Shown here one piece after another: positions 4,804-59,750 of a stretch of 64,000 nucleotides of DNA (positions are counted from its first letter, which is position 1; each line of letters begins with the position of its first letter). The DNA comes from Epiperipatus broadwayi (Eukaryota > Animalia > Onychophora), in NCBI GenBank assembly GCA_028023455.1, contig JAQFVV010000008.1, positions 930,001 to 994,000 on the forward strand, read 5' to 3'. Below the pieces are notes generated by a model. The model was given only the letters and a program-made list of their open reading frames with translations. It was not told the DNA's origin and ran no database searches. A program made the translations under genes and the position numbers.

Positions 4804-7800
4804 TTCTGCTATATATAGGGGTAAGATTTCTGTTTACCAACTGTATATGCATCTGCAATAATTTAATCAAACAAAACATTTTAACCATTTAACTAACTTC
4901 TACAACGATTAGAACACACCTTGCATTTTTCTGCTCACAAGGTTGTACAATTTCTGCTCACACAATTGTACAACGCTACTCTGCACTGCTAGAACATATC
5001 TGGTTATATTTATGCAGTTCAGAATACATAGTAGGGTTCATTTAAATATATTGACTTGTTCAATATCAAATCCAAATTTTCAGCTTTATGCTAATTTTCT
5101 ACAGTACATTTATAATGATAATAATTTTAATAGACCATTTATATGTACAATACAAGATTTTATTAAACTTTAGTTACACTAAATATATATATTGTAACCT
5201 CCCTCATATGATTCCCAACAAATCATATACATAAATTAAATGTTAAGACAAAGATATTGATTTTCTGAAAATTGAACTGGTTAGCATGAAACCACAAATC
5301 TAAAGAAGATTACAAAGTGATCATGAAGATAATAACTTCTGGTCAAACCAGCTTTAAAATCCCCAAACAAAATATTATGAGATAAACATAATATTAGTCA
5401 AACTCATAAATAATTAATCCGGTCTATGAAATGAATATGAGATTGGAATTATAAATTAAGTAGTTAATAAATTAGAATGTAGATAATTAAATAGATGATG
5501 AAAATAAATAAGAATCAAATAAAAACTTAAACGAGCCTAAGAACGTAGAGAAGACAAAGCTGTGTTAGAATACTGAAAGATTAAGATAATGATAGATTAA
5601 GAGCTAATGACTGATTAAGATGGTAAGATGAAATAAGAATGAAGAAATAAAAGAAAGATCAAGATGAAATCGTAGAACAATGTTGATGATGGAGATCTTG
5701 AACTGTAAACTAAGATTGTATTAAATGATAATAAGATAAACTAAATAAAATAGGGATTCCAAGTTTGACAAAACCAAAATATTCACCATAAAGTCCAAAC
5801 AACCTATACGTTTTAAAACAGAAGCAAATTACACCTTAAAGTTTTGTTGACTTTAATAAAAACTATGAAAATAACATAACTCGAATCTAAGTACAATAAA
5901 TAACTGTAGATATAAAATCTATCACAAATTCAAATTCTATCACAAATTCAAATTTTACACTGCAAATTAATAACTTATTCTTATCAGGGTTCCAACAACT
6001 TAAATATTATTATACAAGATATACTTGGGTCAGTGAGAGGGATTTTGCCACTACCCAAATATAGCAAAAAAACAGCTCTTATTACAAAATAGAATTAACA
6101 AACAATATCTGGCAATTCCAGCTAAACTTTATAAACTCCATAATATTATGAACTTTAAGCTTCAAGAAATACGAATACTTTTAATAACTAAACACAATAA
6201 CTAAACACAATAACTTACCAACTTCCTTTTATCAAATAACTATGAGCAATGTGATCAAAATTGGTGAATGATATATCTGCGGTTCAAATAAACTGATTAA
6301 ATGCAAATTAAGTGTTTTATCTTTTAATATACTATTTAAAATAATATGCAACCTAGGTTAACAATATTTTGATTATTAAGTGATGATGCCTTAGATGTAC
6401 TCTTAAACCATAGGGCTTAACAAAATTATTATGATATACTAACATATAGTTAAATATACTATATTGATTGATGATGGCTTCAAAATAATAAGATAATGTG
6501 TTGACAGCAATAACAATAATAGGGTCTATGGTGATTAGCAATAAGACTACAGACAACTAAATAAACTTTTAAAACAACAATATTTATTTACATTTATTTA
6601 CAAATTTATTTCAGAAACATTATCTGATTTAAGTCAGAAACATTATACAAAATCAGGTATAGAAATTAATGTATATCCCATTAAATACACGCATAGTATA
6701 TAAAATAGTATAGTATAGTGATACCTTCATTATCACTATCATTACCAGCTATGTTTCTTCTATTTTATATTATAGAACAGGAAGGTTAAACTTTATTTAA
6801 CATAAATTAACATTCGAATTATAAAATAAAAGTGTATTCAAATCTTTGGGATAAGTGAAAATTTTATAGCTATTTTAATTATGCAAGAATATGATAAGGG
6901 CAATTATCATATGTAGCACAAATAATAATTATTATCACTTGATATGAAGAAACTTATTATATTAATGTGGGGACAGACATCAGAAGTCAAATGTATATAT
7001 GACACCAAAACCTTGCCTATGTCTTCAACATAATCATTCTAATCATTAACCTGTCTTACCAATCCATCGGTGAATTACTGCTTGATGAAAATGAAGCAAC
7101 ATCGTACATATATATGCTTGCTATGCCAGACAGAATTTCCATAATTACTAGTAAGTTATGGTTGGTTTGCTTGTAAACTGATGAAGATACTACAACATCA
7201 TATGTACACTATTCACAATTAGGCAAACCCTATAGATAAACCAGTGTCCCTGAATCTAACTTTATCCTATCATTGCTATATAATTTTAGAATACTAAGAA
7301 CTTCACCATACATGGTGGAAAACTAACTACATAACCTCATGAGGGTTCAAACAATAAAGTGAGGCTCTACAAAACAACATTATAGTTGTACAATAATATA
7401 GCTGATTCCAATACCTTTTTCCTAGATACAAAATGTGTGGACATTGTCTCGTCACAGGGAAACAGAATATGGGCTATGAATACAATCCTCTCTAGGGATT
7501 AACTGTGCTAACTAAGCATTAACTATTTATCAGCCTCAACAATGTAATCCTCTCATGGGATAAGCAATGGGAGGGTGCTCTATCTACCCATGCACAATAA
7601 CAATGATACTATATTTAATGCCACTATACGCTACATATACTTATCAGATAAAAATGATCACAAATTCTTGTCAATACAATAGCAAGATAAAATTAATTCT
7701 AACAATAAAAGTTAAAAGATAGATATCTCATTTCACAATGCATAAACTAATAGTGTATTAAACAAACTAACACTGTAAGTTAACCAACATTAATTATTTT

Positions 7801-11725: not shown

Positions 11726-14700
11726 TTAGGGGTTGGTTGGAGAGGTGCTGTTTAGACCAGTTGTGAATTCCCAGGTTAGTATGGCCAGGTATGGATCGGC
11801 CTCTCTCTTGTCTGTTTCTTGGATATTTTTAATTATGCTGAGGAAGCAGTTATTGATTTCGTTAAGCGGTAATTTTTGAAAAATCACCTTGCATCTGGTC
11901 AACCAGATGGCAAAGTTTATGTAGGTGGCAAGCCTGATTTCAGCGAAAATGCCTCTATTTAAAACCCCTTCAAGAGATGTTAGATCTGGACCATTATTAT
12001 CAATGTGTTTCTGGAAGTTTTGTCTTAGTCCTTGCCAGACCGGACAAAGGCGAAGGATATGGTCCATATCTTCTGGGCTGGAAAGACAGAGACAACATAT
12101 GGGATCTATGCGGAAGCCTCTTCTATTAAGAAATATAGCAGTGGAGAGGCTACCAAGGTTAATTTTGAGAAGGAAGTCTGTGTGTTTAGGTGCTAGTTTC
12201 AATCTACGGGCTAGTTTGCGCAGTTTGTTTATGTCGATGGGGAGGTAAGTGTGTGCCTTCTGGGTATTTGAGTTGGATAGGTTGAAGGCTTCCCAATAGG
12301 TTATTTTTGAATTGAACATGGACGCGGAAGGTGCTATGTGCGTAAAAATGTATGAGATCTGTATTTGAAGCCAGATGGGAGTGAACCTCTGAGGGGGCGG
12401 TCTATCAGTGGGAAGCACTTGCTCTTTGGGAAGCGGACATTGGAAGGTCCTGCAATCAGAATAAAGTTTATGGATCATATTGTAAGTTCTCTGTATTGCG
12501 AATACCTTTATTGAATGCAGTCCCAGTCCATTCATGTCTCTTGGCTTTTGAAGGGTGCGCAGACTGATAAATGATCTGCGCCCACCTCTACAGAGTCGCA
12601 GACAGTGGGATTCTACTTTTTTAATGAAAGCTTCTGTTGGTTTAAAACCCGCAAGATAATATATAATCTTGGGAAGTATGAGGGAGTTTAAGAGTGAAAC
12701 CTTTCCAAATGTGGATATATATATTCTTGAGAGGCATGTTATGGTGATGTCTATTTTGTTTAGTAGTCTTCGTTGTGTTTCCATCCTCATTGCTGTAGGG
12801 GATAGTGACATATTGAATCCCAAGAAAGGCTGAGGCATAGCTTGTAATGAACCTGTTATCCTGTTAGCTGTTTTGATATTCCAAATTGCCGATTTGTTCC
12901 TGTTAATGGTAAGCCCATGCGTCTGAGCATAGTGCTGTAATAGGCTTTCAAGAATGTTTATTTCTTCATGTGATTTAAGAAACACCACTACATCATCCAT
13001 GTAGGAGATGTGGGAGATGTTTTCATTAAGAAGAGGGATGGAGATCCCAGGGAGTGCATCCTCAATGCTCAAAAGCAAGGGATTTATATAGATCATGAAG
13101 AGGAGAGCACTTAATGGGGAGCCCTGGGGAATGGAGATGCAGGGTTTGAACCCAGGGGCAATTCTCCCATTTAGAGAAAAAAAATCTCTCGATTTGCTAG
13201 GAGATTCTCTATGATCTGAATGTATGCCAAAGGAACCTGAAGAGCCTCTAGTTCACCAAGTAGTACATCTATTCGGACAGAGTCAAAAGCCCCGGCAAAG
13301 TCTAGTTGGACTGCGACTGGCCGGGATTGTTTTGTTCTACGGATATGATCAACGAGGAGTCGAAATCGGCTTACAGCATCACCAGTCGATGAACCCCTCT
13401 TAGCATATTGATGCCTGGAAAGTTTTGATATGATTTTCTCTTGAATTTTATCTTTTATAATGCTTTCGATAATTTTGATTAGGAGAGGAACCATGGATAT
13501 TGGCCTAATGTTATTTAAGTCTACAGGTAGATCTTTCTTTTTTATGAAAGGGACCACTGATATAGGATAGATCCCTGGAAGATGTAGGCTATCAGTGGCT
13601 AAGAGATCAATGATTCCCCTTGTAACATGTATGGTAAATTTTTCCAAGTGTAACAGAAGAAATCTAGGAATTCCGTGCATGCCGGGATGAGTGTGTTCAG
13701 GCAGGCTTTTAATTTTGGAGATGATATCAGCTTCAGTAATGCTGTGAGAGTTATTTGAGTCTTTCACAAATTTGTGTCGTCTGGTAACAGTTCCAATGGG
13801 CTGCAGTTTGGTGGAATAATAATCCCTAATTTTGTTAAGCATACTGATGCCAGAGTAAGTAATACCGTCAAGGCACAAAGAGGAGGGTGTGTGATTTCTT
13901 TTTCCTGACCCGAGGGCCCATCTGATATAACCTGGAGTCCAACAATCTTGTTGTTCCAGATAATTGCGTGCTCGCTTAATACGAATATATTCCACAAGAG
14001 TCATTCTGGTTTGTTTATATGTATGTTTTAGGAGTAGAATTTGTGGGATGTTGTGTTCTGTAACTTGGATGCTTTTCAGTTCAGATGTAATCCGATCAAG
14101 TTCTGAGAGTAATCTTAATGGCCCTTTCTGGTATCTATTGTATTGGTTAATAAACTTTTGTGTTGTGGTTATAAATGTATTCCATCCTTGTAATGCTGGT
14201 AGATTCCATATCTTCTGTTCTTGAAAGGTGATGTATATATCTGAGATTAATTGGGGGGGGGCACATTGTGCCTGTTGAGTAATCTCATCGTCCGGGGGAG
14301 GTTGGTTGATGTATGAAGTTGTGGTTGCAATTTGATGGTAGCTTGAACAGCGAGATGATCTGAAAAGGCAATAGGCCAGAGCTGTGTATCTATGAACGAG
14401 ATCATTTCAGGAGAGTAGAATATGAGGTCTATGAGCGAGTGAGTACTTCTGGTATAGAAAGAGAAGGCTCCTTCATGAAAGAGTGCTTTCCCACTGTGTA
14501 TGTTTCTAGCAACCATCTTTAAATATTTTTTCTCAAAATGGTCAAAAGTGTGGTTGAAATCACCAAGCCAGATAACTGGGCTAGGGTTCGATCTAATTGC
14601 TATGTTTATATTATGTATAACTTTGTGTACTATTTGTTCATCTTTAACCAGATACACATTGATAAGAGTGAACAGAAAACCCCGGATTTGTATAGTAGCA

Positions 14701-14984
14701 ATAATGCAATTGGTATCTATGTGCAGGATTTTGAAGAAGTCAATAATTGAATTTCTATTGATGATAAGAGCAACCCCAGCGGTAGCTGAGATGGAGAATG
14801 AGTATATAAAGTAACCAAAGCTCTCAATTGTTTTTATTATCGTGGGGTCTGTGTGAAGGTGAAGCTTAGTTTCTGATAAGCAAAGTATATCTGGTTTTTG
14901 GAGTTTGAACCAATGTGAGATAGCAAACGCCCTGTCTTTGGAGTTAAGCCCCCTGACGTTGAGTGACGTTATTGTGAATGACAT
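11726..14984 (-). pseudogene. LINE ORF2 (APE endonuclease, RT, CCHC) broken by two homopolymer frameshifts
   Basis: APE motifs SLNVRGL, LSETK, GDFN, SDH; RT motifs NIRPIS, LDFAGAFD, PQGSPLS, YMDD; C-terminal CCLC...H...C. Breaks are at G9 (14253-14261) and A8 (13177-13184). Confidence 0.92.
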
Positions 14985-17371
14985 TTTGAAGTAGGTTGCT
15001 TGGTTTCTTGTTCATTAGCTAGAATACTTGCAGTGAGCTGGTTGTCTTTTTGCATTAGGCAGACTTCAGGATCAGTTGATGGGATCCATAATGTTAAATC
15101 TTGGGGGGCTATTTGCCCAGAGGTATTAGCTTCAGGTTGGGTATGATATGAGTTTGATGTATTGTCATTATCTGATTTTAGGGATTCATCTTTCCATTTT
15201 TTATAGTTGGGACTGGCATTGCACTGTATGTCATCAGAGGTTGAGGTGGTCTCATTTGAATCGATATTTCCGCTATTGTTATTGTTGTGAACAAAGGTGG
15301 TGGATTGTGTGTTTCTGTTGCGGCGCTTTTTCCTTTTGCGTGGTGTGGTGAAGGGTTTAGGGACATGGTCAGGCCCAGACTCTGTGAGGCTTGCAGTTTC
15401 TTCTTGCCTAGTTTCAGGATCCATTTCTTCTTGCTCAAAGTCAGAACAAGTGTCTGTTGAAGAGAAATAAGTTTTGCTTGTCTTGTTTTGACATGTTTGG
15501 TGGCATCCCAGTGGGTTGGTGTCTTGGCATTGGTTTTGATCTTTTATGTTGTTTTGATGAGAATCATTTGTTGAATGATTATATGTTTTCAGCTTGATAG
15601 AAGTCTCATGCTCTAAATTTATATCTCGATTATGTTCTATTTCAGGTTTTGTTTGTTGCATGTTTTGTTGTTCTTGTATATGCTCTTCTTTTGAACCACA
15701 CCGATGTGACCGACCCGCAAAGGTACCGCAAGAGGTGCATTGTCTGGATGGGCAGTTGCGCAGCAGGTGTTCCGTCTTCCTGCATTCGAAACATTGCGAT
15801 TCTACTCCCCAGAATGAGATGAAAAGAGGCACTCTTCCAATACGGATTGTGGGGGGGATATCTAATGGCACTATTCCTTTTTTTAATGTAATTCGAAAGT
15901 TTAATGTAATTCGAAAGAGTGCTATGTTTTGCGGAACTTCTTCTTGTATTCCAGGGACCCTAAGATATTTAAAAGAAGTGATTTGCCCATAAGGCATTAG
16001 AAGGTTTTGTAAGTCAGAAATATTGAATCCCAGACCACAATTTTTTACCCTGCCACTTATTGAAGTGTCACGGACTATGTTTGGATTGATGGTAATTAGG
16101 TATCTGTTATCAAGTATCCTATATTTATTTTTAAAAGCTTGTTTTGCCATGATGTTTGTAAATTGGAGGATTATATAACGAGGGTTGGGGTGATATGATA
16201 CCCTTTGAATAACTTTCCAGAGATCTTGGGCTTTTAGCAGGTCGAAGAGTTTACTGGTTGGAAAAGGGAATAATCTTAGTAAGTGGTCTGTAGTGGACAG
16301 AATGAGTGAGGCTTCATCATTGAAGATAGCAAAAGATTTTAGTAATCCTTGTGGCATGGCTTCATTGAATTTGGTAACTGTTTCAGTATAAAGCTGATGA
16401 TTATTGAGTTGGTCATGAGAACTGTTTGATGGCTCATGTATAAACATTCCTGTGTCTGATGCCTCATCCAACTCCCCCATCAACTCAATCAATTGTTGTG
16501 TGGCTTCATTATTGTCTTGCAGATTATTTGAATTGTGTTTTATGTTTCCTGTTACTGATTTGTCATTATTGTTGGATTTTACAATGTTTGCATAAGTGTT
16601 GGCTGTTATATTATCTTTTTGTGTATAATCTGGTTTAGTTATATATCTTTGTGATTGCTTAAATTGTTCATTTGTTGTTTTATTGGAATCGTGATTATCA
16701 TCTTGATGTTTGAAATATCCAATGTTTTGCTTTATTTCAGAGGAAGAGCTGATGTCTGTAGACTCTTCACTACTAGTGTGATCTGGGTTTTTTGTTTTGT
16801 TTTCAGGCACAAGCGTTGATGTGAAACTGGGTTCATAATTTTTTCTCTTGTTCGCGGAAAGATTAATTTGCTTGATAGAACTCTTCATGGTATTGTATTC
16901 TATAACATTCGCATGATTGACGTTAACTGATCGCGTTGTTCTAATTTGAGTTGCTTTTTGCGTATTTTCGCCGCTGCAGATTTTATGTTTGGCTAAAAAA
17001 AATTTTTGTTTTTCATTTAAAGTTGATTTAACAATGTGGTGAGGAGTTAATTCTCCATCAGAAGGGTCTTGTAAAGGGTTTCCTTCTGTTTTAAGTGTTT
17101 TCTCTTTGGTATGAAGAAACTTATCCTTGTCGTTTTCCCTTCGTGTTTGTTTGCCAAGTTTTAACGTTTTATCGTTCAATGCGCTGGTGTTTATTTTAGA
17201 AACACAGCATTTTGCTTTTGATAAATTATCTGATTTGTTTTGCTTTGTTATTGGGAAATTTAAATGTTTATATATTTTTTTCCCCTGACTATCCACTATA
17301 GATTTTTGAAGTAATTCACCCCCCTCTTCCATGTTAGTTGTTGAAGGCTTGGAGCCTTGTAGGCCAGCCAT
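14969..17371 (-). CDS. LINE ORF1, 800 aa: low-complexity N-terminus, probable RRM-like region, zinc knuckle CFECRKTEHLLRNC
   Basis: Intact ORF with CX2CX4HX4C plus a second degenerate knuckle. It overlaps the ORF2 start by 16 nt. Confidence 0.9.
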   Translation of the reverse strand: MAGLQGSKPSTTNMEEGGELLQKSIVDSQGKKIYKHLNFPITKQNKSDNLSKAKCCVSKINTSALNDKTLKLGKQTRRENDKDKFLHTKEKTLKTEGNPLQDPSDGELTPHHIVKSTLNEKQKFFLAKHKICSGENTQKATQIRTTRSVNVNHANVIEYNTMKSSIKQINLSANKRKNYEPSFTSTLVPENKTKNPDHTSSEESTDISSSSEIKQNIGYFKHQDDNHDSNKTTNEQFKQSQRYITKPDYTQKDNITANTYANIVKSNNNDKSVTGNIKHNSNNLQDNNEATQQLIELMGELDEASDTGMFIHEPSNSSHDQLNNHQLYTETVTKFNEAMPQGLLKSFAIFNDEASLILSTTDHLLRLFPFPTSKLFDLLKAQDLWKVIQRVSYHPNPRYIILQFTNIMAKQAFKNKYRILDNRYLITINPNIVRDTSISGRVKNCGLGFNISDLQNLLMPYGQITSFKYLRVPGIQEEVPQNIALFRITLNFRITLKKGIVPLDIPPTIRIGRVPLFISFWGVESQCFECRKTEHLLRNCPSRQCTSCGTFAGRSHRCGSKEEHIQEQQNMQQTKPEIEHNRDINLEHETSIKLKTYNHSTNDSHQNNIKDQNQCQDTNPLGCHQTCQNKTSKTYFSSTDTCSDFEQEEMDPETRQEETASLTESGPDHVPKPFTTPRKRKKRRNRNTQSTTFVHNNNNSGNIDSNETTSTSDDIQCNASPNYKKWKDESLKSDNDNTSNSYHTQPEANTSGQIAPQDLTLWIPSTDPEVCLMQKDNQLTASILANEQETKQPTSKCHSQ

Positions 17372-19139: not shown

Positions 19140-19520
19140 TTTTAAGCTTGTAAGATATAAACAATGAGCATTGCCAATTACTCAACAAGTTTTGTGATAA
19201 ATGCTTAGCCAGAGAAAGCATTTAAAATATTTCTGTCAGGAACCCCTACCCCAAACCTCTGACCAATGGTTTCATGCTTTGGCACTCCTCAGAGGTGGTA
19301 GGATAGCTTCAGACACTAGATCTAAAAATACCAACACAAAGCCAGCATTTATCTAAAAGTTATCTATTGAGTGAAAAATCTGAAAATTTCAGACACCTAC
19401 ATGTCTTCAAACCCAGCTATCCAACTCAAATAGCTATATGGGGCTGAGAGATCTTCAGCCAACCATATATTAGTAGACTTAGCAATACAACATCGCATAA
19501 GACTTAAAGCAGAGACTATA
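19140..19520 (-). mobile_element. Dispersed copy related to the 375-bp hammerhead-containing repeat (family A)
   Basis: Colinear similarity to 45356-45690 (e.g. CCAGCATTTATCTAA, AAAATCTGAAA.TTTC). Confidence 0.75.
19245..19302 (-). ncRNA. Type I hammerhead ribozyme motif
   Basis: Minus strand reads CCTACCACCT-CTGAGGA-GTGC(CAAA)GCAT-GAAA-CC(ATT)GG-TC/AGAGG...GGTAGG. All core nucleotides and the GUC site are present. Confidence 0.8.
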
Positions 19521-21619: not shown

Positions 21620-23030
21620 AATGCCAAAAACAGAATTTAAATACAATATATATTTTTTTATTTAATAGAATTGAGCCAATTATACTTTTGAAACTTTTGC
21701 ATCATATTCATGGCTATTCTCCTGGGAAGACTCACGCTAAATTGAATACTGTTCAATCTTTGGTTCATTACATATTCATCTTGTGCCTCCTTAATCTTGC
21801 ACTGCCTGCCATTTCTTTCCTCACACAATAATTGGATCAAAGTTGTGGTCTGTGTTCTCTTTCATAGTTGTAAAAAACTTATGTGTTGGTATAATTGGAC
21901 TTCGCTTTTGACTTTTTATACATTAAAGCATGTTGTGTGACTTGCTTTTATATTAGCTTTGGTTTCATTGCAGTATGTATATGGACAACTCTTTTGGCTC
22001 TATCTAATGGCATAAATGACATTAGGCTTATCCAGTTTATGAATTTGGTCCTTCATATTGTTGAAGAGTTTGTTTAGATTGGGTATTCTGAAACCTACAT
22101 TAAATTTGTCGGAGCATAACTTTGCAATTTTATTTGCTGTTTGTGGTAACTGTGGTAGAACAATCCAGCTTTTACTGTTTATATTTACTATTTTGTGGGA
22201 GATATTTCTTTTGAATTGTTTTATGTATGTCTGTTATAATGTATCCAGCTTTCATCAAATCAGCAATGTAAGTCTCTAAATTTTTTGTCAGACTCAAATT
22301 GACATAAGTAATTATTGCAGTACAATATGTCTGTTATAATGTATCCAGCTTTCATCAAATCAGCAATGTAAGTCTCTATATTTTTTGTCAGACTCAAATT
22401 GACATAAGTAATTGTTGCAGTACAATGCCACTGGATCCAGCCAAAAGAGCTGTCCATGTATATACTATGGTGAAATGAAGACTAACCTAAAAGCAAGAAT
22501 CACAAAACACCCTGCAATGTATAAAAACGTAAAAGCAAAGTCCAATTATACCAACACATCGTACTTTAAAATCATGAAGAGGAAATGGACACAGGTTTGA
22601 TCCAAATATTATTAAAATAACATGTGAGGAAAGAAAGAAGAATAAAATTAAGGAGACATGATCCATTGCACAAATTAAATATGTAATAAACCAAAGATCG
22701 AACACTATAATGCATATTTTTAATGGCGCAGTTCTATTCAGAACTATGGTTCTGGCAGCAATCTGCCAAAAGTGCATTTAAGACTTTATTAGCTTTATTT
22801 TACCTTTTCATATTAACTTGAACAGTACAAGTTAGGTAAAATTATATAATTGTATAAAAAATGTATATACTATTAAAAAGTATTCAAATAAGCAAGACAT
22901 GATCTTGCCGGCAGAATAACCATGAATATGATGCAAAAACTGCAAAAATATACTCAGCTCATATAATTCTTTTAAATAAAAAAATATATATTTAAGCTCT
23001 GTTTTCAGCACTTTATATTAGTATTAACAA
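21620..23030. mobile_element. Penelope-like element 3' region (GIY-YIG) in head-to-head inverted arrangement
   Basis: Minus frame gives WIVLPQ...KDQIHKLDKPNVIYAI...CPYTY..ETKANIKA and EERNGRQCKIKEA; plus frame gives CPCIYYGEMKTNLKARITKH. 21875-22010 and 21630-21730 recur inverted at 22435-22560 and 22915-23000. Confidence 0.8.
22227..22426 (+). repeat. 100-bp tandem duplication at the PLE inversion junction
   Basis: Two near-identical units starting ATGTCTGTTATAATGTATCCAGC at 22227 and 22327. Confidence 0.95.
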
Positions 23031-29590: not shown

Positions 29591-29940
29591 AAAACAGGCA
29601 AAACTCTCTATATGTATTGTACTCAGTGCAAGCTTGAGTAATCAATGGATGCCAGAAGGCTTGTGCATAAAATCCCCATCTAGTGCCTACTCATCCAATA
29701 TCCCCACACTAGTTTCTGGCTTGAGGCATTCATCAGTGAGGAGCCTTGGATGCACCTAGATCTTAGGATGTAATGCAATCCTCGAGCAGCCACCTTTTAT
29801 CTCTACTTAACTACAAAACTATGAGACTTAAATTGAAAACAATATAATATTTTCAATCCAAGATCATTAGCTTATATAGTCATATAGGTCTGAACTTGCT
29901 TGCACACAGTGGCAATATATAGAGAGAGTTTTCCTGTTTT
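29591..29940 (-). mobile_element. Hammerhead-containing repeat (family B) with about 45-bp inverted ends
   Basis: CAGGCAAAACTCTCTATA...TATAGAGAGAGTTTTCCTG. Internal motif CATCCAA..CCTCA-CTGATGA-ATGCC(TCAA)GCCA-GAAA-CTAGTG/TGGGG-ATA-TTGGATG at 29692-29752. Confidence 0.8.
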
Positions 29941-41120: not shown

Positions 41121-43563
41121 TTGTGCAATCTACTAATCTTGTTGTCTTAGTGTATTATTACTAACAGTTATTTGTATTTGAAAAACATTAAATAAAGTTT
41201 AAAATTTTCTAGACATTCAACATTAATCATAATGATAAAAATACTCCAACATATTATCACATTTAAAATACCATCATCACAACCTTCAAGAAAATTCCTA
41301 CATATAATTAATGCAAGGTAAAAAAAAACCGTTGCATTTAAAACTTATTTTAAAATATTCAATTTAAATGAAGAGATAGATTCAAACTTATGATTTTACT
41401 CAGAAAATAAGTGCAATTAAATATTTGAAATACTGGATTAATTGTATATTTTTCAGTGATTAAAAAACAAAATCGAAATTGTAAAAAAATTGAAGGAGTT
41501 TGTGCAATTTATTTATTCATTTATTTAAATATATAGGCCCAAGTAATATATGAAGAAGAGATTCCTATTGCATATTTTTTTTATACAGTATACTGATAAT
41601 TAATATACATCTGCTGAATGAAATGTTAAATTCAAAAATGAGAAATAAAAAAATATGGTAGAAAATATATTTGAAACAAAAAATGAAGTAGAACAATTAA
41701 TTAGTTTCAGTGAACCCAATGAACTTTCTCATTATGAACCTACTTCACCATTTAAAAAAAGATAATAAAGCTATGTGACAGAAAAATAGACATTTATACA
41801 TAGAAACTTCTAAACTTTAAAAAAAGCAATTTTATATTATATCAAAAGAGTGCAATAGTAAAAATAAGACTTGGAGAGGACTACAATTACTCATGTGCAA
41901 ACTCTGAAAAAACTTGATAAGATCTGCAAAACCTAAATACATTTTTAAAAAAAACATATCAATTAATACTTATAAAATCCTGGGGCTTAATGATAGAGAA
42001 TATGGAAAACTATTTTAAAAAATCATTTAAAAGACAACCTAGTAAATTTTAAAAAAAAACACAAGATCTTTCATTTATAGTTATATGTTAGACTATTTAC
42101 ATCATCTTGAATTGGTAAACATTTTTAGAAAAACTTAAGACTTTATTAAATACATTCAATTATTAGTAATAATACAAAGTTTAGTAAGGAACACAATATT
42201 TTGAACAGTATTATTTTCTCTTCAAATGTTCCTGGCAGAAAGAAAAAAAAGTAAAGAAATGGCTAATTTCATTAGCCAAGTTGGTGTAATAATTCATGGT
42301 TGAAAAACACATTCAATCTCTGCCTTAAAAAGAAAAAATGGAGAATTCAGAAGTACCTTCATAAATAAATTATATAAAATTTCAATTGCCTATTGCTGTT
42401 GACAGAATAGCTTACTGGTTAAAGTATCACCTTAAATTCAGTATTCAAAAATATAAAGGAATAAGTTCAATTCCTATGCTACTTAACAATGATCAGGCCA
42501 GCAATATCTTTAATTGAGGGAGAATAAACCATGAGATATGTATTCCACACTAACTGTGAGTTATTATTAATAGTAGAATGTACTTAGAAAAGTATAAATA
42601 AAGTTTGAATTTCTCTAAAATCATTTACTATTCAACTAGATAATGAAAATAATCCAATTTATAACTATAAGTAAAATACTATCATCACAAATCTTAAGAT
42701 AATAATAAAGATTTTTTTTTTATCGACATGAAATGAAAATTCCAAAGAACTTCTTAAATAAATGTGCAGTAACATTGCAGCAAGATTGAAAAAAAAATAA
42801 AAATAAATTTAAAAAAATAAAACAAGGACTATCTTTCAAAAGATCATGAAATCCAAAAAATGTTCTAATTTTGTATAAGAAATTACTTAAAGATGCCAAA
42901 TGATAGATTTTAATATATGAATCACAAAGTTCATAAAGTTTTACTACAAAGACAATAACAAGACAAATAATTTAAGAAATTAAATTTTTGAGAAAAACAT
43001 GAATAATAGAAGATACTTTTGACATAACTATAAAAAAATGAAGGGCAATAGAAATGACAATACAATATCAGAAGTGTACTAGTGACTAAATAAGTTTCAA
43101 AATATTATGTGGAAGATATACATTATCAGCTATAATTAATCCACTGCATAATATATTGTTTTAATACTTTTCCACAAGTTTCTATTATAAGTCTCCCCAT
43201 TCCAACACACATCACCACTATCACTACCACTAACACAAAGATCTAGCAAACTATTTGTTTTCCTAAGTCACATTATTTACTGCAGTATTTTTAATCCCTT
43301 GGGATACAATCTAAAACAGTTTTCATCTATCAAACATTTTTCTTCTAGAAATTTTCAATTCTTCTATTTATCTAAATCAGTTTAATTATTGTTTTTTTCT
43401 TTTTATGTTATTTCATTAGTCTCAATAATACTTTATATTCCATGCGTCATAATCATATATTAGAATGAGTAAAACACTAATTAAAAACTTTTATATGAAT
43501 GTGCAAATATATATATATATATATATAAATTGAATAACAAATATTTCAATAAAAAAAAAATAC

Positions 43564-43675
43564 CTGTTGATATGAATTTCTTGTTGCTCAGTACTCAAAT
43601 GAGATATTTTTTTGTTACATATGTAACAATATACTGCACTTTTATCTTCAGAAGAACAAAGTTTTTCCAAAGTTT
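43564..43675 (-). CDS. SLX4: SLX4 exon, UBZ4-1 (ETLEKLCSSEDKSAVYCYICNKKISHLSTEQQEIHINR)
   Basis: Acceptor TTTTTTTAATAG| and donor AG|GTATTT flank an open 112-nt exon. CxxC...H-x-N-R matches the first UBZ of SLX4 (human: CQICQKNL...QHVNRC). Confidence 0.9.
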
Positions 43676-45397
43676 CTATTAAAAAAATAATAATTTAACT
43701 GTATTTTATGTATATATGCATGTGAATATATATATATGAATAAAGAAAAAGAGAGAAAGGGATGGAAATGCAATAAAAATAATATAGGTTATAACCAAAC
43801 TATGAGAACGAAAACTGAAAGAAAACTGTCAGTAAATAATAAACCAACTGAACAACTACTTACATAAAATTATATATAGAAAAGCATTAGTGTCAAAATA
43901 TTAATTAGTCAATTTATAATAAAATCAACAAAAAAGGTTAGAATTTATTATTCTATATTAAAATATAATTTAAAGAAAAGAAAATCTGTAAAAAAAAAAA
44001 AAAAATATTATTATTAATATTTTATTCTGCAAAAAAACAACAACAAACAATTGTTATCAACTAAAAATGGTGCTTAGATTCCTCATATGATTTTAAAAAA
44101 TTGAGCAAGGAAAATTCCTAATGTGGTCCATAATTTTACTGCAAACAAAAATGCAAAGACCAATGTAATAATTTTACTAACTTTCATCTCTAACTGGAAT
44201 TAAAACCCATTAAAGTCTTCCCATTTTCTTAGAAGCCTGATTGTATTTTATTGATGACAGATTAAATGTACTTATTTATATTGACTTCTTTTCTTATGAC
44301 AATAAAAAATTCTGGTCATTCATTCCCCAAATATTGTAAAATTGTCAGCCAAAGAAGCAATTTGCAATTAAAGGCAAAGTGTCAAGACATTTCAGATCTA
44401 ATCTGCAATTTAATAATTTTATATCTGATCACTATAACTAATTATAATTTTGAAATAAAAAGTGATTACAAAAACTGGAATACGAACTCTCATACAATAA
44501 ACGAGACATTATTACAAAAAAAGAAGGTAATTTTAAAAATGAACACATAATTTATTACAAAGACACAAATATTAAAAATACAAGTGAAATGAGATTTATT
44601 ATAAATAAAACACAAAAAACAACAATTTGAAGATTGACAATATATCAGATAGAAGCTAGGTTTGTTTTCAACTTAATGGAGATATCAAATACAAATAACT
44701 GCAATTTATACCTTAACAAATTATCATTGTGATAAAAAAGTGGAAGAGTTTTATAAAAATGAATTAAAAAAATTTGAAAAACCATTTTAAAAGTGCCACA
44801 GAAATTTTAATATAAAATTGAAAGAAAAAATCTGCAAGAGTAGTGCACAAATTTGGGAATAGAAAAAGAAAAGAAAGAAGACACAGATTTGTGATATATG
44901 CAGAAAAAACAAATAAAGCAAGAATTAAGTTGGCTTTTTTTAAAAAAAAAAAAAACTATAAAGGAAAAAATATGAAATAATGTGCCTAATAAATGCAACA
45001 CATAAATTATTTCGAGAAATATGTATTAATGCAAAACTGTAAACAAAATATTGTTTAGAAAAAACAAGAGCAATTAATATTTCCAACTTTCAAAAATCAG
45101 AATTTATTTAAAATATTAAGATTTTGACCGAGATCATTATTTAAAATAAAGAAATAATAATAAAAATCTTTTGGCAAATTATTACAAAATATTTAAATAA
45201 GGATATAATAACTAACTGAAAGAATACATAGTGATTTACAAAAGATGAAACAATATATCAGAAATTACAGATTTTTAAAATTTCTGACATTTACATATAA
45301 GAAGATATTAGAAATTATAAACATCATTTTTTTCATAGTTATCCAAATTTAGCATATTATATAATGAGCATGCTAATAGCTCTTAACAAGCTTTTTT

Positions 45398-45460
45398 GAA
45401 TATCCTTATCTCAGACCGGTTTCTAGCTCTGGCTGTCATCAGTGAGGCACTAGGACATTC
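45398..45460 (-). ncRNA. Type I hammerhead ribozyme motif, best-preserved family-A copy
   Basis: GAATGTCCT-AGTGC-CTCA-CTGATGA-CAGC(CAGA)GCTA-GAAA-C(CG)G-TC/TGAG-ATA-AGGATATTC. Confidence 0.88.
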
Positions 45461-45776
45461 AGATATTAGATTTAAAATACCAGGTCAAGCCCCAGCATTT
45501 ATCTAATAGTTACCTATTAAGTAGAAAATCTGAAATTTTCACACATCCATCCAACTATCTAACTTAAATAGCCATATGGGACTGAACTAAGTTCACCCAC
45601 ACTGTATATTAATAGCTTTAGCAATATCAAATCATCAAAGCACCAAGAGCAAAACAATAACTGCAAGGCAATAAAGTCATATAGCACATGACATATGGAT
45701 ATCCGAAAATTTTAGATTTTGTACTGAAACTATTAGATAAATGCTGGGGCTTGACTTGCTATTTTAAATCTAATAT

Positions 45777-45839
45777 GAATGTCCTAGTGCACCCTGATGT
45801 CAGCCAGAGCTAGAAATGGGTCTGATGATAGGAATTTTC
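45777..45839 (+). ncRNA. Hammerhead motif, decayed (CTGATGT core)
   Basis: GAATGTCCTAGTGCACC-CTGATGT-CAGCCAGAGCTA-GAAA-TGGGTC-TGATGATAGGAATTTTC. Confidence 0.7.
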
Positions 45840-46149
45840 AGAAAAGCTTGTTAAGAGCTACTAGCAAGCTCATTATATAACATTTGTAGTACAAGCTTAT
45901 TAAATCAAGTCATATGATATATGATTTGATTTTCTTGCAACTATTATTTTGTTCTTGAGGCTTTGGTGATTTTATATTGCTAAACTATTAATATATGGTG
46001 TACTTGAACTTAGTTCAGTCCCATATGGATATTTAAGTTAGATAGCTGGATTTGAAGACATATGGATGTCTGAAAATTTCAGATTTTCTATTTAATAGGT
46101 AACTATTAGATAAATGTTGGGATTTGACCTGGTATTTTAAATCTAATAC

Positions 46150-46217
46150 CTGAATGTCCTTTAGCCTCAATGATGACAGCCAGAGCTAGAAACTGGTTTG
46201 AGGATAGGGATATTCAG
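46150..46217 (+). ncRNA. Hammerhead motif, decayed (ATGATGA core, GTT site)
   Basis: CTGAATGTCCT-TTAG-CCTCA-ATGATGA-CAGCCAGAGCTA-GAAA-CTGGTT-TGAGG-ATA-GGGATATTCAG. Confidence 0.75.
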
Positions 46218-46479
46218 AAAATCTTGTTAAGAGCTATTAGCATGCTCATTATATAACATTTGTAATACAAGCTTATTAAGTTAAGCCAAGTGATATGACT
46301 TCATTTCCTTGCAAAAATAAGCATAGTAGGCCAATACAATTATTATAAGATGATAATTATCTAATTATTATTATTATTATTATTATTTATCAAATTTGTT
46401 TATATAACAATACTTTCTGGAAGTAAAAATGAGCTTAACAAAACAATAAAAAGATTTGATAAAATTTGTTAAAAAGTTT

Positions 46480-46800
46480 AAAATAAAAATAAGTACAATT
46501 AAAATTAAAGCAGTAAACATAAGTGGAAATAATAAAATAATAATAATGGTAGTTAATAGAAATTTATTTATAGAACAGATTAAATCTTTGAAATATTTAG
46601 GAAATTAATTTATGATGGAAACGGTTACAAAAAAAAATCAGAATAAAAATTGCAATGGTTAAATAGGCCATTAATTGTGGCAAAAATTATTTTATAGACC
46701 TAACATAAAATCTTATTAAATGTTAAAGTGAAGCACAATACAAATCAAAAATTAAAATAGGAAAAAAGATGAAGATATAAAGGTTTGGAGTAAAATGCAT
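46480..46800 (+). pseudogene. RTE/CR1-type LINE RT C-terminal remnant
   Basis: EQIKSLKYLG followed by a decayed RIKIAM segment. Confidence 0.5.
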
Positions 46801-47429
46801 AAAATAGTATTTCCATATGTTATGAACTCTATTAATTTGGAATGTTAATCTGGAAAAAAATCATTTATTTTTGAAAATGAAGCAAACATAATATAAAACT
46901 GAACTGTTGGCTATTAAAATGACATGAAAAAATTTAGTTAAAATTAAATAATCAATTCAAAAAGTTATGATCCAATTAATGAAAACTAGTAATTCATGAT
47001 TTAAAAATAAAAATTAATGCTAGTGGTTTGAGCTTTGAAAAATCTAAACCACAAAATAAAGAAAGAAAGAAATTCATCTCAGAAAATAAAATTCAATTAA
47101 GAGAAAGTAACAAATATGAGGGGGAGGGAAAGAGTAAAATAAAATATCAAAGCTGTTCATAACTAATTTGTAAGTACTAGTATTATTTATTATATGAAAA
47201 GCAATTTTCTTCATAAAAATAAAAAAAAATAAAAACTGAATATGTAATACATAGATAAAATAAAATTTTGCATTAATTAGAAAATAGCTTAATATACAAA
47301 ATAATAATAACTTTTATTAATTAGAAAATGACTTAGTTGAAAAAATCAGCAAAATTTAGAAAAGAAAAAAAATTAATTCCAAAGGAAAAAAATAAGACAT
47401 CAAAATTGAAAATAAAGCCATGAGTATTC

Positions 47430-47800
47430 AATCTTTTCAAGTAATTTTAATTTCAAACAATATCAAAAACTTTTTCAACCAAATCAAAATCCTTGATCAA
47501 ATCAATATAACAATATACAAATCAAGTTTTTGCTTTTAACACTTTTCTTGTGTTTTCTTCCAAATAATTTTCTAACAATTCACCTGTAATTGAAAGCAAC
47601 ATATTCAATAAAATACATGAAATTTTTTTTACTGTAATGGATAAAAATGATATTCCATTATAATTACTACAGTCTCCTGTATTTTTTAATTTCTATAAAT
47701 TCATATACGAATAAAAAATTCCAATCATTTTGAAGCTAATATATGATCATCAAATTTTAACATTTCTTCAGATATTTTATCACAATTTAGATTTTCCATT
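47430..47800 (-). pseudogene. RTE/CR1-type LINE RT N-terminal remnant
   Basis: GDCSNYNGISFLSIT...ILLN and YIDLIKDFDLV, decayed forms of NYRGISLL and FIDLxKAFDxV. Confidence 0.6.
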
Positions 47801-50285
47801 TTTAATATTATTAAATACTACTTTAACTTTAACAAATGGATATCTCTGTCCAAATCTAATTGACTCAGTAAGATGATACATCATTTGAATTCTTATATAA
47901 TTATTCAAAAGATGAACTAAGTATTTCATTAGTTCAGATTATGCTATCATTTATCAGATCCAATTCATTTACAATATATCAAAAAAAAGAATAAGATTTA
48001 CAGTGATTATGATCAACAAATATGTTTCCTTTGCAATTTTAATCCACTGATCATTCTTAAGATTTCCTTTTATTGTGTATGAATTTCCAATTTGATTTTA
48101 TTATTCAGCCAAACAAAAAAAAAAAAAGCTACATTTTCTTTAAATCAACTCATTAATAATACATTAAGTCAAAAAAGCAATTAGGAATCCTTTTTAAGAG
48201 ATTCCAAAAAGGAATTTATTTATATTCAAAACATAACTTAAAATTCCAGGCCACATAACAAGAATGAAAATACAAAGTGACAATTTTAAAATTAGCGGTT
48301 AAAAACTGCTGAAATTTACAACTAGCAGCAGTTACTTCAAAAGAACATACAAATCTTGTCTTTATATGTTTAAGAGAAGATCTATTTTTTATTGCAACTA
48401 TTGGTTTTAATTTTGAACATGCTAATTGTGTGATCAGTCCACAATCTGCCATCACTAATGCTCACGTAATATTAACTTCTTATATATGGTAATTTCTAAG
48501 TATAATGTAATTTTTGAGATTTCTGTTTTGCATCCACATTTCTATAAATAAAATTTTTTGCCTAAATTACGTGTTTGTAAAAATCAATTAATTTGTTCTG
48601 TGGCTATTGTTTCCAATAATTTTAGTCATATTTTATTGACTTCACCACATTAAAAGATTGAAAAAAAAAAATCATTCTTTTAAAAATATTAATCACACCA
48701 CACTATACAATAAAGAATAAATATTTTCTTTCTCTGAACTGTCTGAATCTAATATTGGAGGACGCAAATCAATTTTTAATATTATTAATTTTTCAATGAT
48801 ATATTTAGAAAGTTCAAAAATAGAAAATGTGAAACTAGACTTCACAAACCCAAGGTCACACAAGCTCCTTTCAGTCAAGGAAGAACTCTTCCAAAAAATA
48901 TTTATAACTATATGGCTATTCAGTTAAATATCCGTCATCTAATTTTATTAAAAGTAGCTATCAAATATATCAAATTTAAATATTTTAAGCATAATTTGCA
49001 TTTTCCATGTTCCTATATGCGGGGGAAAAAAATTGAAATGTTTTGCCCAAACATAAGCAAACAATCATTTGTTTAAACTCCTAACTCAAATCAATTTCAG
49101 AGCAAGTCATTTTTGACTGTATAATGTTATGCATAATCATAATAAGAAACTCCCAGTCTATTAAAACTATCCCAATAATTGCTTTCTCAACACCAATGGC
49201 TTTATATAAATTCATTCTTATACATATTTGTCTTCAAAAAAACAATTGCTTTGTTTGAGATTAAAGAATAAAAAATATGGTTACACAAATTCACTACCCC
49301 AATGCCAGAATTAGTGCACCTCTTTATAATAATTGTAATAATGGATATGAGAAGCTAATGACAATCACATACTATATTAATTGATCTTAGGTCAGTTAAA
49401 AAAAGAGAGAGAGAGAGGACAAAATAACATTGAAAATAGATTGCAGAATATACTCTTAATCAGCATTTATTAATAATATGCCCTATGAGAAAATTATTCC
49501 ATTATCCGTCACCTGTGAAAACCACTTGTAAACTAAATTCACACTTGAGTAAGTATATAATATCAGTTAATTTTATATTTATTAATAATTACAATTTTAT
49601 ATTTTAGAAATTTTTTGATTTAAAAGACATATATTGTGTAAGATAAAGAATTTATTTATTACAAAATTCTTCAAAAATTAAAATATTATCTTTAAAAGAC
49701 TAGTAGCCAAGGAAAACTAAAAAGATAATATAAAGATATTAATTTTTTCAAAAATCTGGTTGTCTTTTAACAATTTATTTAAATTGATTTTATATTATTT
49801 ATAAATATGGAAATTCCAACTCATGATAAAAAAGAGATAAAGGGCAAAAAAGTCATAAATATGTTCTCATATCACAGATTCGTTCTTTAATCTATTTGTT
49901 GTCTATTCTGTATTTTATCTTAAATAATATTCTCTGAATAAAAATGCTGCATCTCACATCAAAGTTCATTTCTGGTTAGAAAAACTACCAAATTATTTAA
50001 ATTGATCACGTCCTCAAGCTAATAATTATCAGAACTAAAAAAATTTTTTCTGTTTTTTTATCACTAGCTTATAAAGCACCTGGGTATCTCTCAATCACAA
50101 CAGTCCATTAACATTAAATATGATAACAATTTCACAGCAAAATATTTGTAAATAGGTTATCTTGTTTAAAGAAAAAAATTCACACATCTCTTAATGCATT
50201 TTTGTTAAGACTAATATAATAATCCATTTTCATAAAATCATTTTTAATGTTCTTCCTCTATCTCTTTTCCTTACAATCATCATAA

Positions 50286-59175: not shown

Positions 59176-59750
59176 TTTATTAATGCTTAGCATGCTTTTG
59201 ATATATATAGCATATCATAAGCAAACCAATCTCACGTCTTTATATATATACTTGATAAATATTTTAATATATTTAAATTTATTTAATATTCAAAAATATT
59301 TAATTCCTTCAAAAAAAGCCCATTTCTTTGAGAGGGGGGTGCTTATGTCCTTTTTGTTTATCGAGTATCGGACTTTTGCTATTGCCCAAGCCTCTTTAAT
59401 TTTTCGTTTTCTGTCTTCTCTTTCAGTGCATACAATTGCATCTCTAGACAAATCGAATTTACGGCCAGAATTTTGTTCATGGTCTATAAATATTGAAGAA
59501 TGTTCACTTCTTTTATGTGTTCTACTGTACTGGTATTTATGCTGGGCTAGTCTCATTGAGAGATTAGCTCTCGATTTCTTATAATATGCAAGCATCCTCC
59601 TCTCAAAGAAATAGGCTCTTGGAAGGAATTTAAATATTTTTGATTAAATAAATAAAATTAAATATATTAAAATATTTATCAACTATACATATAAGCTTGG
59701 AACAATAAAGAAGTGAGATTGCTATGATTATGATGCTAAGCATTAATAAA
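59176..59750 (-). mobile_element. 5'-truncated Penelope-like element (GIY-YIG C-terminus) with an inverted copy of its 3' end
   Basis: RLAQHK...DHEQNSGRKFD...ERED RKRKIKEAWAI...INK...LSKKW; arms 59176-59309 and 59621-59750 are inverted copies. Confidence 0.85.

What the first reader, a model, noticed from the sequence alone, without database searches (positions are those of the whole stretch)
45356..46320. Retrozyme-like system: 375-bp tandem repeat with one type I hammerhead per unit and a PLE-style inversion
Seen: three hammerhead motifs, one per unit, with no ORF. The best copy reads CUCA-CUGAUGA-stem II-GAAACCGGUC/UGAG, with stem I extended past an internal loop by GAAUGUCCU/AGGAUAUUC. 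Established: a tiny stem III with palindromic ACCGGU is the dimer-cleaving design known from newt satellite 2 and metazoan non-LTR retrozymes, where tandem units are cut to monomers that can circularise. Inference: unit-length RNA or circRNA is reverse-transcribed by Penelope RT. The head-to-head inverted copy matches the geometry of the coding PLE insertions in this window (21620-23030, 59176-59750), which is local evidence for the mobilising partner. One unusual feature is position 11.1: A rather than C in most copies.
Basis: partly seen in the sequence, partly recalled or inferred. Interest (0 to 1): 0.9.

Follow-up and report, generated by a model that had tools for sequence, protein, structure and literature searches.

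The report
Hammerhead retrozyme inserted Penelope-style
This is one old, decayed insertion of a very abundant 376-bp non-coding mobile repeat that carries a hammerhead-ribozyme motif and was pasted in by Penelope-like retrotransposon machinery: a clean example of a known kind of element, not a new one.

Summary
Window 45357-46314 is a single 958-bp insertion flanked by an imperfect 11-12 bp target duplication. It has a minus-strand arm of 0.9 unit and a plus-strand arm of 0.5 + 1 unit plus a 59-nt "tail". Each arm segment carries one type I hammerhead motif. Only the minus-arm motif keeps the full catalytic core.

The family has thousands of copies in this 5.6-Gb animal genome, all about 87.5% alike. 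Across 29 loci the architecture repeats:
- head-to-head arms in 18 of 29 loci;
- two fixed 3' ends, about 57 and 118 nt past the ribozyme cut site;
- a tail on exactly one arm in 12 of 12 clean cases;
- 8-14 bp target duplications and frequent (TA)n targets.

This is the published Penelope-like element footprint (PMC8557442, PMC11167929). The hammerhead fold is supported by compensatory changes across four sister families, all with a palindromic helix III. The 10.1/11.1 pair is C·A. Rfam does not detect any of these motifs.

The class is already described as non-LTR retrozymes, non-autonomous PLE derivatives. The scan has reported sister families in this genome before. Self-cleavage, transcription and circular RNA remain untested. 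The insertion ends argue against a unit-length cleaved RNA as template.

The parts
45345..45356 (.). Left copy of the target-site duplication (aaatttagcata)
   Evidence: Read. It matches aaataagcata at 46315-46325 with one indel.
45357..45692 (-). Inverted, 5'-truncated arm. It covers reference unit positions about 30-376 and ends at the canonical 'no-tail' 3' terminus ...CUCAUUAUAUAA.
45397..45462 (-). Hammerhead motif A. The full core is intact, helix I is 4 bp plus a distal extension, and helix III is ACCGGU. The predicted cut is between 45414 and 45413.
45690..45884 (+). 5'-truncated partial unit of the plus arm (reference positions 178-381). It joins the minus arm with a 3-nt overlap (GAC).
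45776..45841 (+). Hammerhead motif B, decayed: A9>U, helix III is AAUGGGU, and the proximal helix I is weakened. The nominal cut is 45822|45823.
45880..46255 (+). Full 376-nt unit of the plus arm. It was used as the reference unit in this report.
   Evidence: The RNA fold has z = -5.5.
46150..46217 (+). Hammerhead motif C, decayed: C3>A, C17>U, and CCGG>CUGG. The nominal cut is 46198|46199.
46256..46314 (+). The 'tail': the first ~59 nt of the unit repeated after the canonical 3' end, ending ...UUCCUUGCAA. It is present on this arm only.
46315..46325 (.). Right copy of the target-site duplication (aaataagcata)

Best explanation
Window 45357-46314 is a single, old insertion of a non-autonomous Penelope-like-element derivative, an animal 'non-LTR retrozyme'.

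The unit. The 376-nt unit carries three things:
- a type I hammerhead with a tiny palindromic helix III (the dimer design);
- just downstream, the sites where a PLE reverse transcriptase starts copying;
- a highly self-paired body.

Inferred mechanism.
1. Genomic copies are transcribed into longer-than-unit RNA.
2. A PLE RT/GIY-YIG protein supplied in trans nicks both strands of an AT-rich or (TA)n target about 10-14 bp apart.
3. It starts reverse transcription internally at one of two sites, one about 57 nt and one about 118 nt 3' of the ribozyme cut.
4. The two 5'-truncated cDNAs are joined head to head, often through 2-7 nt of microhomology.
The result is an inverted arm, a partial-tandem arm, a tail on one end only, and a target duplication.

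Role of the hammerhead. It probably processes multimeric transcripts as a dimer or with protein help, and could yield circles. It does not define the insertion ends.

What is shown: the anatomy, its recurrence across loci, the TSDs and the covariation. What is inferred: the helper protein, the nature of the template and catalysis.

The copies in the window are fossils. Two of the three ribozyme cores are mutated.
For: Abundance and age:
- The family is dispersed, with 4948-7330 first-look candidates in the 5.6-Gb assembly.
- Copies are about 87.5% alike, both within and between loci. This indicates one old burst.

Insertion footprint:
- 18 of 29 loci are head to head.
- The 3' ends cluster at ...UUAUAUAA and at ...CUUGCAA, 61 nt further on.
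- Exactly one tail is present in 12 of 12 clean two-armed loci.
- 12 of 27 loci have exact TSDs of 8 nt or more, against 10.7% of mismatched flank pairs.
- 8 of 21 tail ends abut (TA)n.
- Junction overlaps are 2-7 nt.

Match to published PLE hallmarks:
- Inverted 5'-truncated copy, a tail at one end, and microsatellite bias (PMC8557442).
- Two internal RT start sites that define the tail, both strands nicked and extended, and AT-rich targets (PMC11167929).

PLE background in this genome:
- GIY-YIG-like endonuclease fragments are extremely abundant, with 96,904 first-look candidates. The top Atlas cluster for the query carries PF01541.
- Such fragments lie head to head in this window.

Hammerhead fold:
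- 89.9% of cells pair against 79.9% when shuffled (0 of 500 shuffles reach it) and 27-36% when the partners are slid.
- Four pairs show compensatory changes across four sister families.
- Helix III is always palindromic: ACCGGU, ACCAUGGU, ACUAGU, AUCAUGAU.

Other features:
- The unit RNA folds far better than shuffles on the ribozyme strand, z = -5.5 against -2.9 on the opposite strand.
- There is no ORF above 45 aa, and GC is 32%.
- The class is described in PMC7229834 and in bioRxiv 10.64898/2026.07.22.740005.
Against: - No autonomous PLE sharing this unit's ends was found. The sampled PLE fragments are all degenerate. None of the 150 best hits to the 27-codon peptide that starts at the AUG of CUGAUGA sits in a long ORF.
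- Pfam itself does not call the endonuclease fragments GIY-YIG.
- There is no usable RNA evidence. The runs found are contigs of uncertain kind, so they show no transcript ends and no circular joints.
- The 10.1/11.1 pair is C·A rather than the 'highly conserved' G-C (PMC4209133). Rfam hammerhead models give no hit. Catalytic competence is therefore unproven.
- The tail is about 59-61 nt, against the published 30-40 nt.
Confidence: 0.85

Rival explanations
1. The hammerhead cuts tandem transcripts to unit length, a ligase circularises them, and the PLE RT copies the circle by rolling-circle reverse transcription. This would give arrays longer than one unit.
For: - Arms with more than one unit exist, up to 2.5 units.
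- Three of about 47 arms begin within 0-3 nt of the predicted cut, where about 0.5 is expected.
- The unit RNA is highly self-paired, like known retrozyme circles (PMC7229834).
- The rolling-circle idea was proposed for PLEs in PMC4209133.
- Fixed internal RT start sites are compatible with a circular template.
Against: - No insertion end lies at the cut site on the 3' side.
- In the only PLE studied in vitro, ribozyme-dead templates insert equally well, and unprocessed RNA is the main substrate (PMC11167929).
- Units within one arm are no more alike than units from different loci: 87.7% against 87.5%. This is uninformative because the family is a single burst.
- No circular RNA evidence is available here.
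Confidence: 0.2
2. The 376-bp unit is not a separate non-autonomous family. It is only the terminal (pLTR/UTR) part of a coding PLE, seen here as extremely 5'-truncated copies.
For: - PLE insertions are heavily 5'-truncated, and their pLTRs carry hammerheads (PMC8557442, PMC4209133).
- The AUG inside CUGAUGA opens a 27-codon frame. This mirrors the ORF start inside the hammerhead of the Anolis PLE (PMC11167929).
Against: - Nearly all loci contain the complete unit-to-unit junction (position 376 followed by position 1) with no coding sequence between units.
- None of the 150 best peptide hits lies in a long ORF.
- No unit match lies next to an endonuclease fragment in a way that suggests continuity, in 30 PLE loci.
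Confidence: 0.07
3. An ordinary satellite or segmental duplication whose hammerhead-like motif is a chance or dead relic with no role.
For: - Rfam gives no hammerhead hit.
- Two of the three local motifs are mutated.
- The 10.1/11.1 pair is non-canonical.
Against: - Copies are dispersed with different flanks, TSDs and fixed termini.
- Compensatory changes and conserved palindromic helix III across four families.
- 13 strict motif hits against 0 in shuffles.
Confidence: 0.02

Closest known systems
Metazoan non-LTR retrozymes (Cervera & de la Pena 2020, PMC7229834; Li, Clavereau & Pollet 2026, bioRxiv 10.64898/2026.07.22.740005)
   Same: - ORF-less repeats of about 170-450 bp, here 376 bp.
- One type I hammerhead per unit.
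- Low GC.
- TSDs longer than 4 bp.
- Thousands of copies.
- Coexistence with PLEs.
- A highly self-paired unit RNA.
- A non-Watson-Crick pair at the base of helix II has a precedent: U·U in axolotl HHR_Amex2.
   Different: - Expression, circularity and cleavage are untested here.
- Most copies are short two-armed or partial-tandem insertions with defined termini, not long arrays.
- The 10.1/11.1 pair is C·A.
Penelope-like element insertion footprint (Craig et al. 2021, PMC8557442; Frangieh et al. 2024, PMC11167929)
   Same: - 5' truncation and partial tandem structure.
- An adjacent inverted 5'-truncated copy.
- An extension ('tail') at one end only.
- AT-rich or (TA)n targets.
- Two internal RT start sites downstream of the hammerhead.
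- An AUG of a reading frame inside the CUGAUGA box.
   Different: - No RT/GIY-YIG ORF, so the element is non-autonomous.
- The tail is about 59-61 nt rather than 30-40 nt.
- The RT start sites are not in an obviously AC-rich stem-loop.
Newt satellite 2 / axolotl HHR_Amex1 and PLE minimal hammerheads (PMC7229834, PMC4209133)
   Same: A very short helix III with a palindromic sequence. This predicts activity as a dimer of neighbouring motifs.
   Different: [quoted passage not shown]
- This family has a 4-position helix II with a C·A base, and a long helix I interrupted by an internal loop.
Sister families in the same genome (earlier scan notes, e.g. 453-nt, 348-bp and 410-425-nt units)
   Same: The same fold-back + tail + TSD architecture with outward-pointing hammerheads. 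Follow-ups reached the same verdict of a known kind.
   Different: This is a different family: a 376-nt unit with its own helix sequences. Its body is 70-75% similar to at least three other families seen here.

Membership tests
Type I hammerhead ribozyme | Eleven invariant core nucleotides (C3 U4 G5 A6 G8 A9 G12 A13 A14 A15.1 U16.1) and a non-G at position 17 | tested here: met
   Met in window copy A and in 28 of 53 family copies. Window copies B (A9>U) and C (C3>A) fail.
Type I hammerhead ribozyme | Three helices around the core with helix I open, supported by covariation | tested here: met
   Across 14 copies of four families, 89.9% of cells pair against 79.9% when shuffled (0 of 500) and 27-36% when slid. 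Four pairs show compensatory changes.
Type I hammerhead ribozyme | G10.1-C11.1 pair at the base of helix II | tested here: not met
   C·A in 49 of 53 copies. Sister families have G-C decaying to G·U, A·A, or U·U. A U·U precedent still cleaves (PMC7229834).
Type I hammerhead ribozyme | Recognised by the curated Rfam hammerhead covariance models | tested here: not met
   No hit at the gathering threshold or at E<=10. Sister copies, including one with G10.1-C11.1, also give none. The miss therefore looks like a model limit.
Type I hammerhead ribozyme | Site-specific self-cleavage 3' of position 17 | not testable with these tools
   Only indirect evidence: 3 of about 47 arm starts lie within 0-3 nt of the predicted cut.
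Non-LTR retrozyme | Short (150-450 bp) ORF-less repeat units, each with a type I hammerhead, and no LTR, PBS or PPT | tested here: met
   376-nt period. No ORF above 45 aa. One motif per unit.
Non-LTR retrozyme | Dispersed multicopy family with TSDs longer than 4 bp and low GC | tested here: met
   4948-7330 candidates. TSDs of 8-14 bp. 32% GC.
Non-LTR retrozyme | Expressed as unit-length linear and circular RNA | tested here: inconclusive
   Only contigs of runs guessed to be RNA were available. They cover the repeat but not the flanks, and they show no ends or reliable circular joints.
PLE-mobilised insertion (Penelope-like footprint) | Inverted 5'-truncated copy next to a partial-tandem copy | tested here: met
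   Present in the window locus and in 18 of 29 loci.
PLE-mobilised insertion (Penelope-like footprint) | Two alternative 3' termini, with a 'tail' present at one end only | tested here: met
   Termini lie at unit positions about 376 and about 61 of the next unit. Exactly one tail is present in 12 of 12 clean two-armed loci. The tail is longer (about 60 nt) than the published 30-40 nt.
PLE-mobilised insertion (Penelope-like footprint) | AT-rich or microsatellite target preference with a target duplication | tested here: met
   8 of 21 tail ends abut (TA)n. TSD enrichment is shown.
Autonomous Penelope-like element | Encodes RT plus a GIY-YIG endonuclease | tested here: not met
   There is no ORF in the element. 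No long ORF continues from the hammerhead AUG in 150 genomic hits.

The most novel reading that the evidence does not exclude
In this lineage the hammerhead may be a deliberately weakened, protein- or dimer-gated module, not a simple transcript cutter.
- Three of four sister families keep a non-Watson-Crick 10.1/11.1 pair: C·A, A·A and U·U.
- At least a fifth of arm 5' ends stop in the 9 nt from C3 to position 10.2, not at the scissile bond.
This hot spot could mark a bound PLE protein, the folded ribozyme core acting as a roadblock to reverse transcription, or a transcription start. Any of these would give the hammerhead a structural role in defining element ends.
Probability: 0.1. Interest if true: 0.55.

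Novelty: new member of a known kind. Interest (0 to 1): 0.28.

Why it matters
The finding adds one well-resolved family to the known retrozyme/PLE system. It shows in genomic fossils the same two-start-site, two-strand insertion logic that was demonstrated in vitro for a single lizard PLE.

Its practical value is for annotation. These foldback insertions can be mistaken for tandem satellites, microRNA-like hairpins or gene features. Curated Rfam models miss their ribozymes.

It does not open a new question by itself. The unusual C·A pair and the 5'-end hot spot are modest leads for ribozyme and PLE biochemists.

Tried and rejected
- Tandem Repeats Finder on 43000-49000 found no array.
- Rfam gave no hammerhead hit at the gathering threshold or at E<=10, on the window and on four sister loci. 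Only chance snoRNA or miRNA-like matches appeared.
- Sequencing runs: 22 runs hold parts of the stretch, but all are kept as contigs and their 'RNA' label is a guess. Laying four of them showed family-wide coverage in at least four coded organisms and no coverage of the flanks. It showed no molecule ends and only single-contig joints, so it says nothing reliable about transcription or circles.
- Search for the autonomous partner. A DNA search with the window's PLE fragment and a protein search with a GIY-YIG-like piece returned only degenerate copies, with no long ORFs. Unit matches near them are independent neighbours. A peptide search from the hammerhead AUG found no long open frame.
- Pfam did not recognise the endonuclease fragments. 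Only the ESM Atlas look-alike search pointed to GIY-YIG.
- Circle versus linear multimer. Comparing unit identity within arms against identity between loci was uninformative, because the whole family is a single burst.
- The organism could not be named, because ids are coded.

Full report
**What is there**

Reading 44800-47000 and the repeat search show a composite element.
- A minus-strand copy lies at about 45354-45692.
- It abuts plus-strand copies that run from 45690 to about 46314.
- The plus-strand direct-repeat spacing is 376 nt (126 nt at 87% identity).
- The minus copy pairs with the plus units over 57-141-nt blocks at 82-93%.

Tandem Repeats Finder reports nothing, as expected for about 1.5 diverged units. 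No ORF exceeds 45 aa. GC is about 32%, against about 21% in the flanks.

**The hammerhead motifs**

Each unit carries one type I hammerhead-like motif.

- helix I is CUCA/UGAG, extended past an internal loop by GAAUGUCCU/AGGAUAUUC;
- the core is CUGAUGA ... GAAA;
- helix II is CAGC-CAGA-GCUA;
- helix III is the palindrome ACCGGU, followed by C17;
- the predicted cut is 45414|45413.

Motif B (45776-45841) has A9>U and a decayed helix III. Motif C (46150-46217) has C3>A and C17>U.

In 53 family copies:
- 10.1 is C and 11.1 is A in 49;
- 28 keep all invariant core positions;
- CpG decay is visible, with CCGG becoming CUGG or CCAG.

Rfam hammerhead models give no hit at the gathering threshold or at E<=10. 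They also miss sister-family copies, including one with a canonical G10.1-C11.1 pair. I therefore read the miss as a limit of the models for motifs with a 2-4-nt helix III and an interrupted helix I. It is not evidence against the fold.

**Is the fold real?**

The window and the fetched loci contain three further families. Their bodies are 70-75% similar to this unit, but their ribozyme helices differ.

In an alignment of 14 copies from the four families:
- 89.9% of pair cells form standard pairs, against 79.9% in shuffles (0 of 500 reach it) and 27-36% when the partners are slid;
- four pairs change on both sides (CG/UA, AU/UA, AU/UA/GC, CG/UA);
- helix III is palindromic in every family, with different sequences (ACCGGU, ACCAUGGU, ACUAGU, AUCAUGAU). 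This is the double-hammerhead design described for newt, axolotl and PLE motifs (PMC4209133, PMC7229834).

A strict descriptor gave 13 hits in the loci and 0 in shuffles.

Only the 10.1/11.1 position fails to pair: C·A here, A·A and U·U in two sisters, and G-C decaying to G·U through its CpG in the third. A U·U at that position is known in an axolotl retrozyme that still cleaves, better as a dimer (PMC7229834).

**Family and architecture**

The window's assembly is 5.6 Gb. The unit has 4948-7330 first-look candidates.

I mapped the reference unit (window 45880-46260) on 29 distinct loci and inspected the ends base by base. The results were:

a. 18 of 29 loci are head to head, like the window.

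b. The 3' ends fall at two places only. One is ...CUCAUUAUAUAA (unit position 376, about 57 nt 3' of the cut). The other is ...UUCCUUGCAA, about 61 nt into a further unit (about 118 nt 3' of the cut).

c. In all 12 cleanly bounded two-armed loci, exactly one arm has this roughly 60-nt tail.

d. 8 of 21 tail ends run straight into (TA)n.

e. 12 of 27 loci have exact flank duplications of 8 nt or more (up to 14), against 10.7% of mismatched flank pairs.

f. Arm-to-arm junctions often overlap by 2-7 nt.

In the window:
- the minus arm (45357-45692) ends at the no-tail terminus;
- the plus arm has a partial unit (45690-45884), a full unit (45880-46255) and the tail (46256-46314);
- the flanks carry an imperfect duplication, aaatttagcata and aaataagcata.

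The finding is therefore one insertion event, not a locally expanded array.

**Comparison with the literature**

These are the published hallmarks of Penelope-like elements:
- 5' truncation, partial tandems, an adjacent inverted 5'-truncated copy, a short extension at one end only, and microsatellite bias (PMC8557442);
- biochemically, nicking and extension of both target strands, AT-rich cleavage, and reverse transcription starting at two adjacent internal RNA sites whose spacing is the tail (PMC11167929).

That study also places the PLE start codon inside the hammerhead. Here the AUG of CUGAUGA opens a 27-codon frame that stops at the UAA of the canonical 3' terminus.

ORF-less hammerhead repeats of this size are the 'non-LTR retrozymes' of PMC7229834. 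A 2026 preprint derives them from PLE pLTRs (10.64898/2026.07.22.740005).

PLE remnants are extremely abundant in this genome. An endonuclease-like 114-aa piece has 96,904 first-look candidates. Its closest Atlas cluster carries PF01541 GIY-YIG, although Pfam itself does not call it.

**Mechanism and its limits**

The insertion ends do not coincide with the ribozyme cut on the 3' side. Only 3 of about 47 arms start within 0-3 nt of it, where about 0.5 is expected. Arms reach 2.5 units.

This argues against a unit-length cleaved linear RNA as template. It fits internal initiation on longer-than-unit RNA. A circular template cannot be excluded.

Units within one arm are no more alike (87.7%) than units from different loci (87.5%, n=1572). 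This shows a single old burst and makes that test uninformative.

The unit RNA folds much better than shuffles on the ribozyme strand (-100.4 kcal/mol, z = -5.5) than on the opposite strand (z = -2.9). This is in line with retrozyme RNAs.

No usable RNA evidence was obtained. The runs are contigs of uncertain kind. They show only that the family occurs in several coded organisms.

No autonomous partner with matching ends was found.

**Verdict**

The retrozyme/PLE reading is supported as to class and insertion machinery. The template inference is not supported.

The element is a new member of a known kind. The scan had already reported sister families in this genome with the same footprint.

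I used the window copy as the coordinate reference. I built no full-length consensus of the element.

Noticed in passing
Unit positions about 292-300 (C3 to 10.2 of the hammerhead), e.g. L004:1419, L021:1416, L009:1423, and the minus arms of L005, L006, L019, L024 and L028: At least 9 of about 47 arm 5' ends fall in this 9-nt window, not at the scissile bond. Several more hits in the table start at position 295-298 of the query. The cause is unknown. It could be an RT roadblock, a transcription start, or the edge of a protein footprint.
   Followed up: partly
window 19231-19320 (-) and 29677-29764 (-): Two further hammerhead motifs from sister families. One has helix III ACCAUUGGU, with G·U at 10.1/11.1 through CpG decay. 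The other has helix III ACUAGU, with A·A. The 19-kb copy shares 74% identity with the unit body over 260 nt.
   Followed up: partly
window 45442-45357 (-) and equivalent positions in family copies: The AUG inside CUGAUGA opens a 27-codon frame (MTARARNRSEDRDIQKSLLRAISMLII in better-preserved family copies, e.g. L018; the window's own minus-arm copy carries an indel and stops after 18 codons). In intact copies the frame ends at the UAA of the canonical 3' terminus. This is reminiscent of the Anolis PLE ORF that starts inside its hammerhead. It may be a relic of the parental PLE N-terminus.
   Followed up: partly
window 21650-22960, with a 100-bp tandem duplication at 22226-22425: Degenerate GIY-YIG-like endonuclease fragments lie on both strands, head to head. 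The centre holds two 100-bp direct repeats that are 98% identical.
   Followed up: partly
window 11726-17371 (-): A broken LINE. Adjacent ORFs carry Exo_endo_phos, RVT_1 and zf-RVT domains, together with an 800-aa ORF that has no Pfam hit.
   Followed up: partly
L010:2566-2803 (-): A head-to-head foldback of a sister hammerhead family scores 100 bits (E = 7.6e-20) against Rfam MIR7533, below that family's gathering score of 230. Such foldbacks can mimic long miRNA-precursor hairpins.
   Followed up: no
window 45508-45609 and 46018-46119 (unit positions about 139-240): In contigs of four low-depth runs from four coded organisms, this body segment has 10-100 times the word depth of the hammerhead segment. 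It is also the part shared with sister families. It is therefore the most conserved and most abundant module of the superfamily.
   Followed up: no
L078:616-1099: Another related family with a 418-nt period and a 66-nt tail. It lies beside, but is not continuous with, a head-to-head pair of endonuclease fragments.
   Followed up: no
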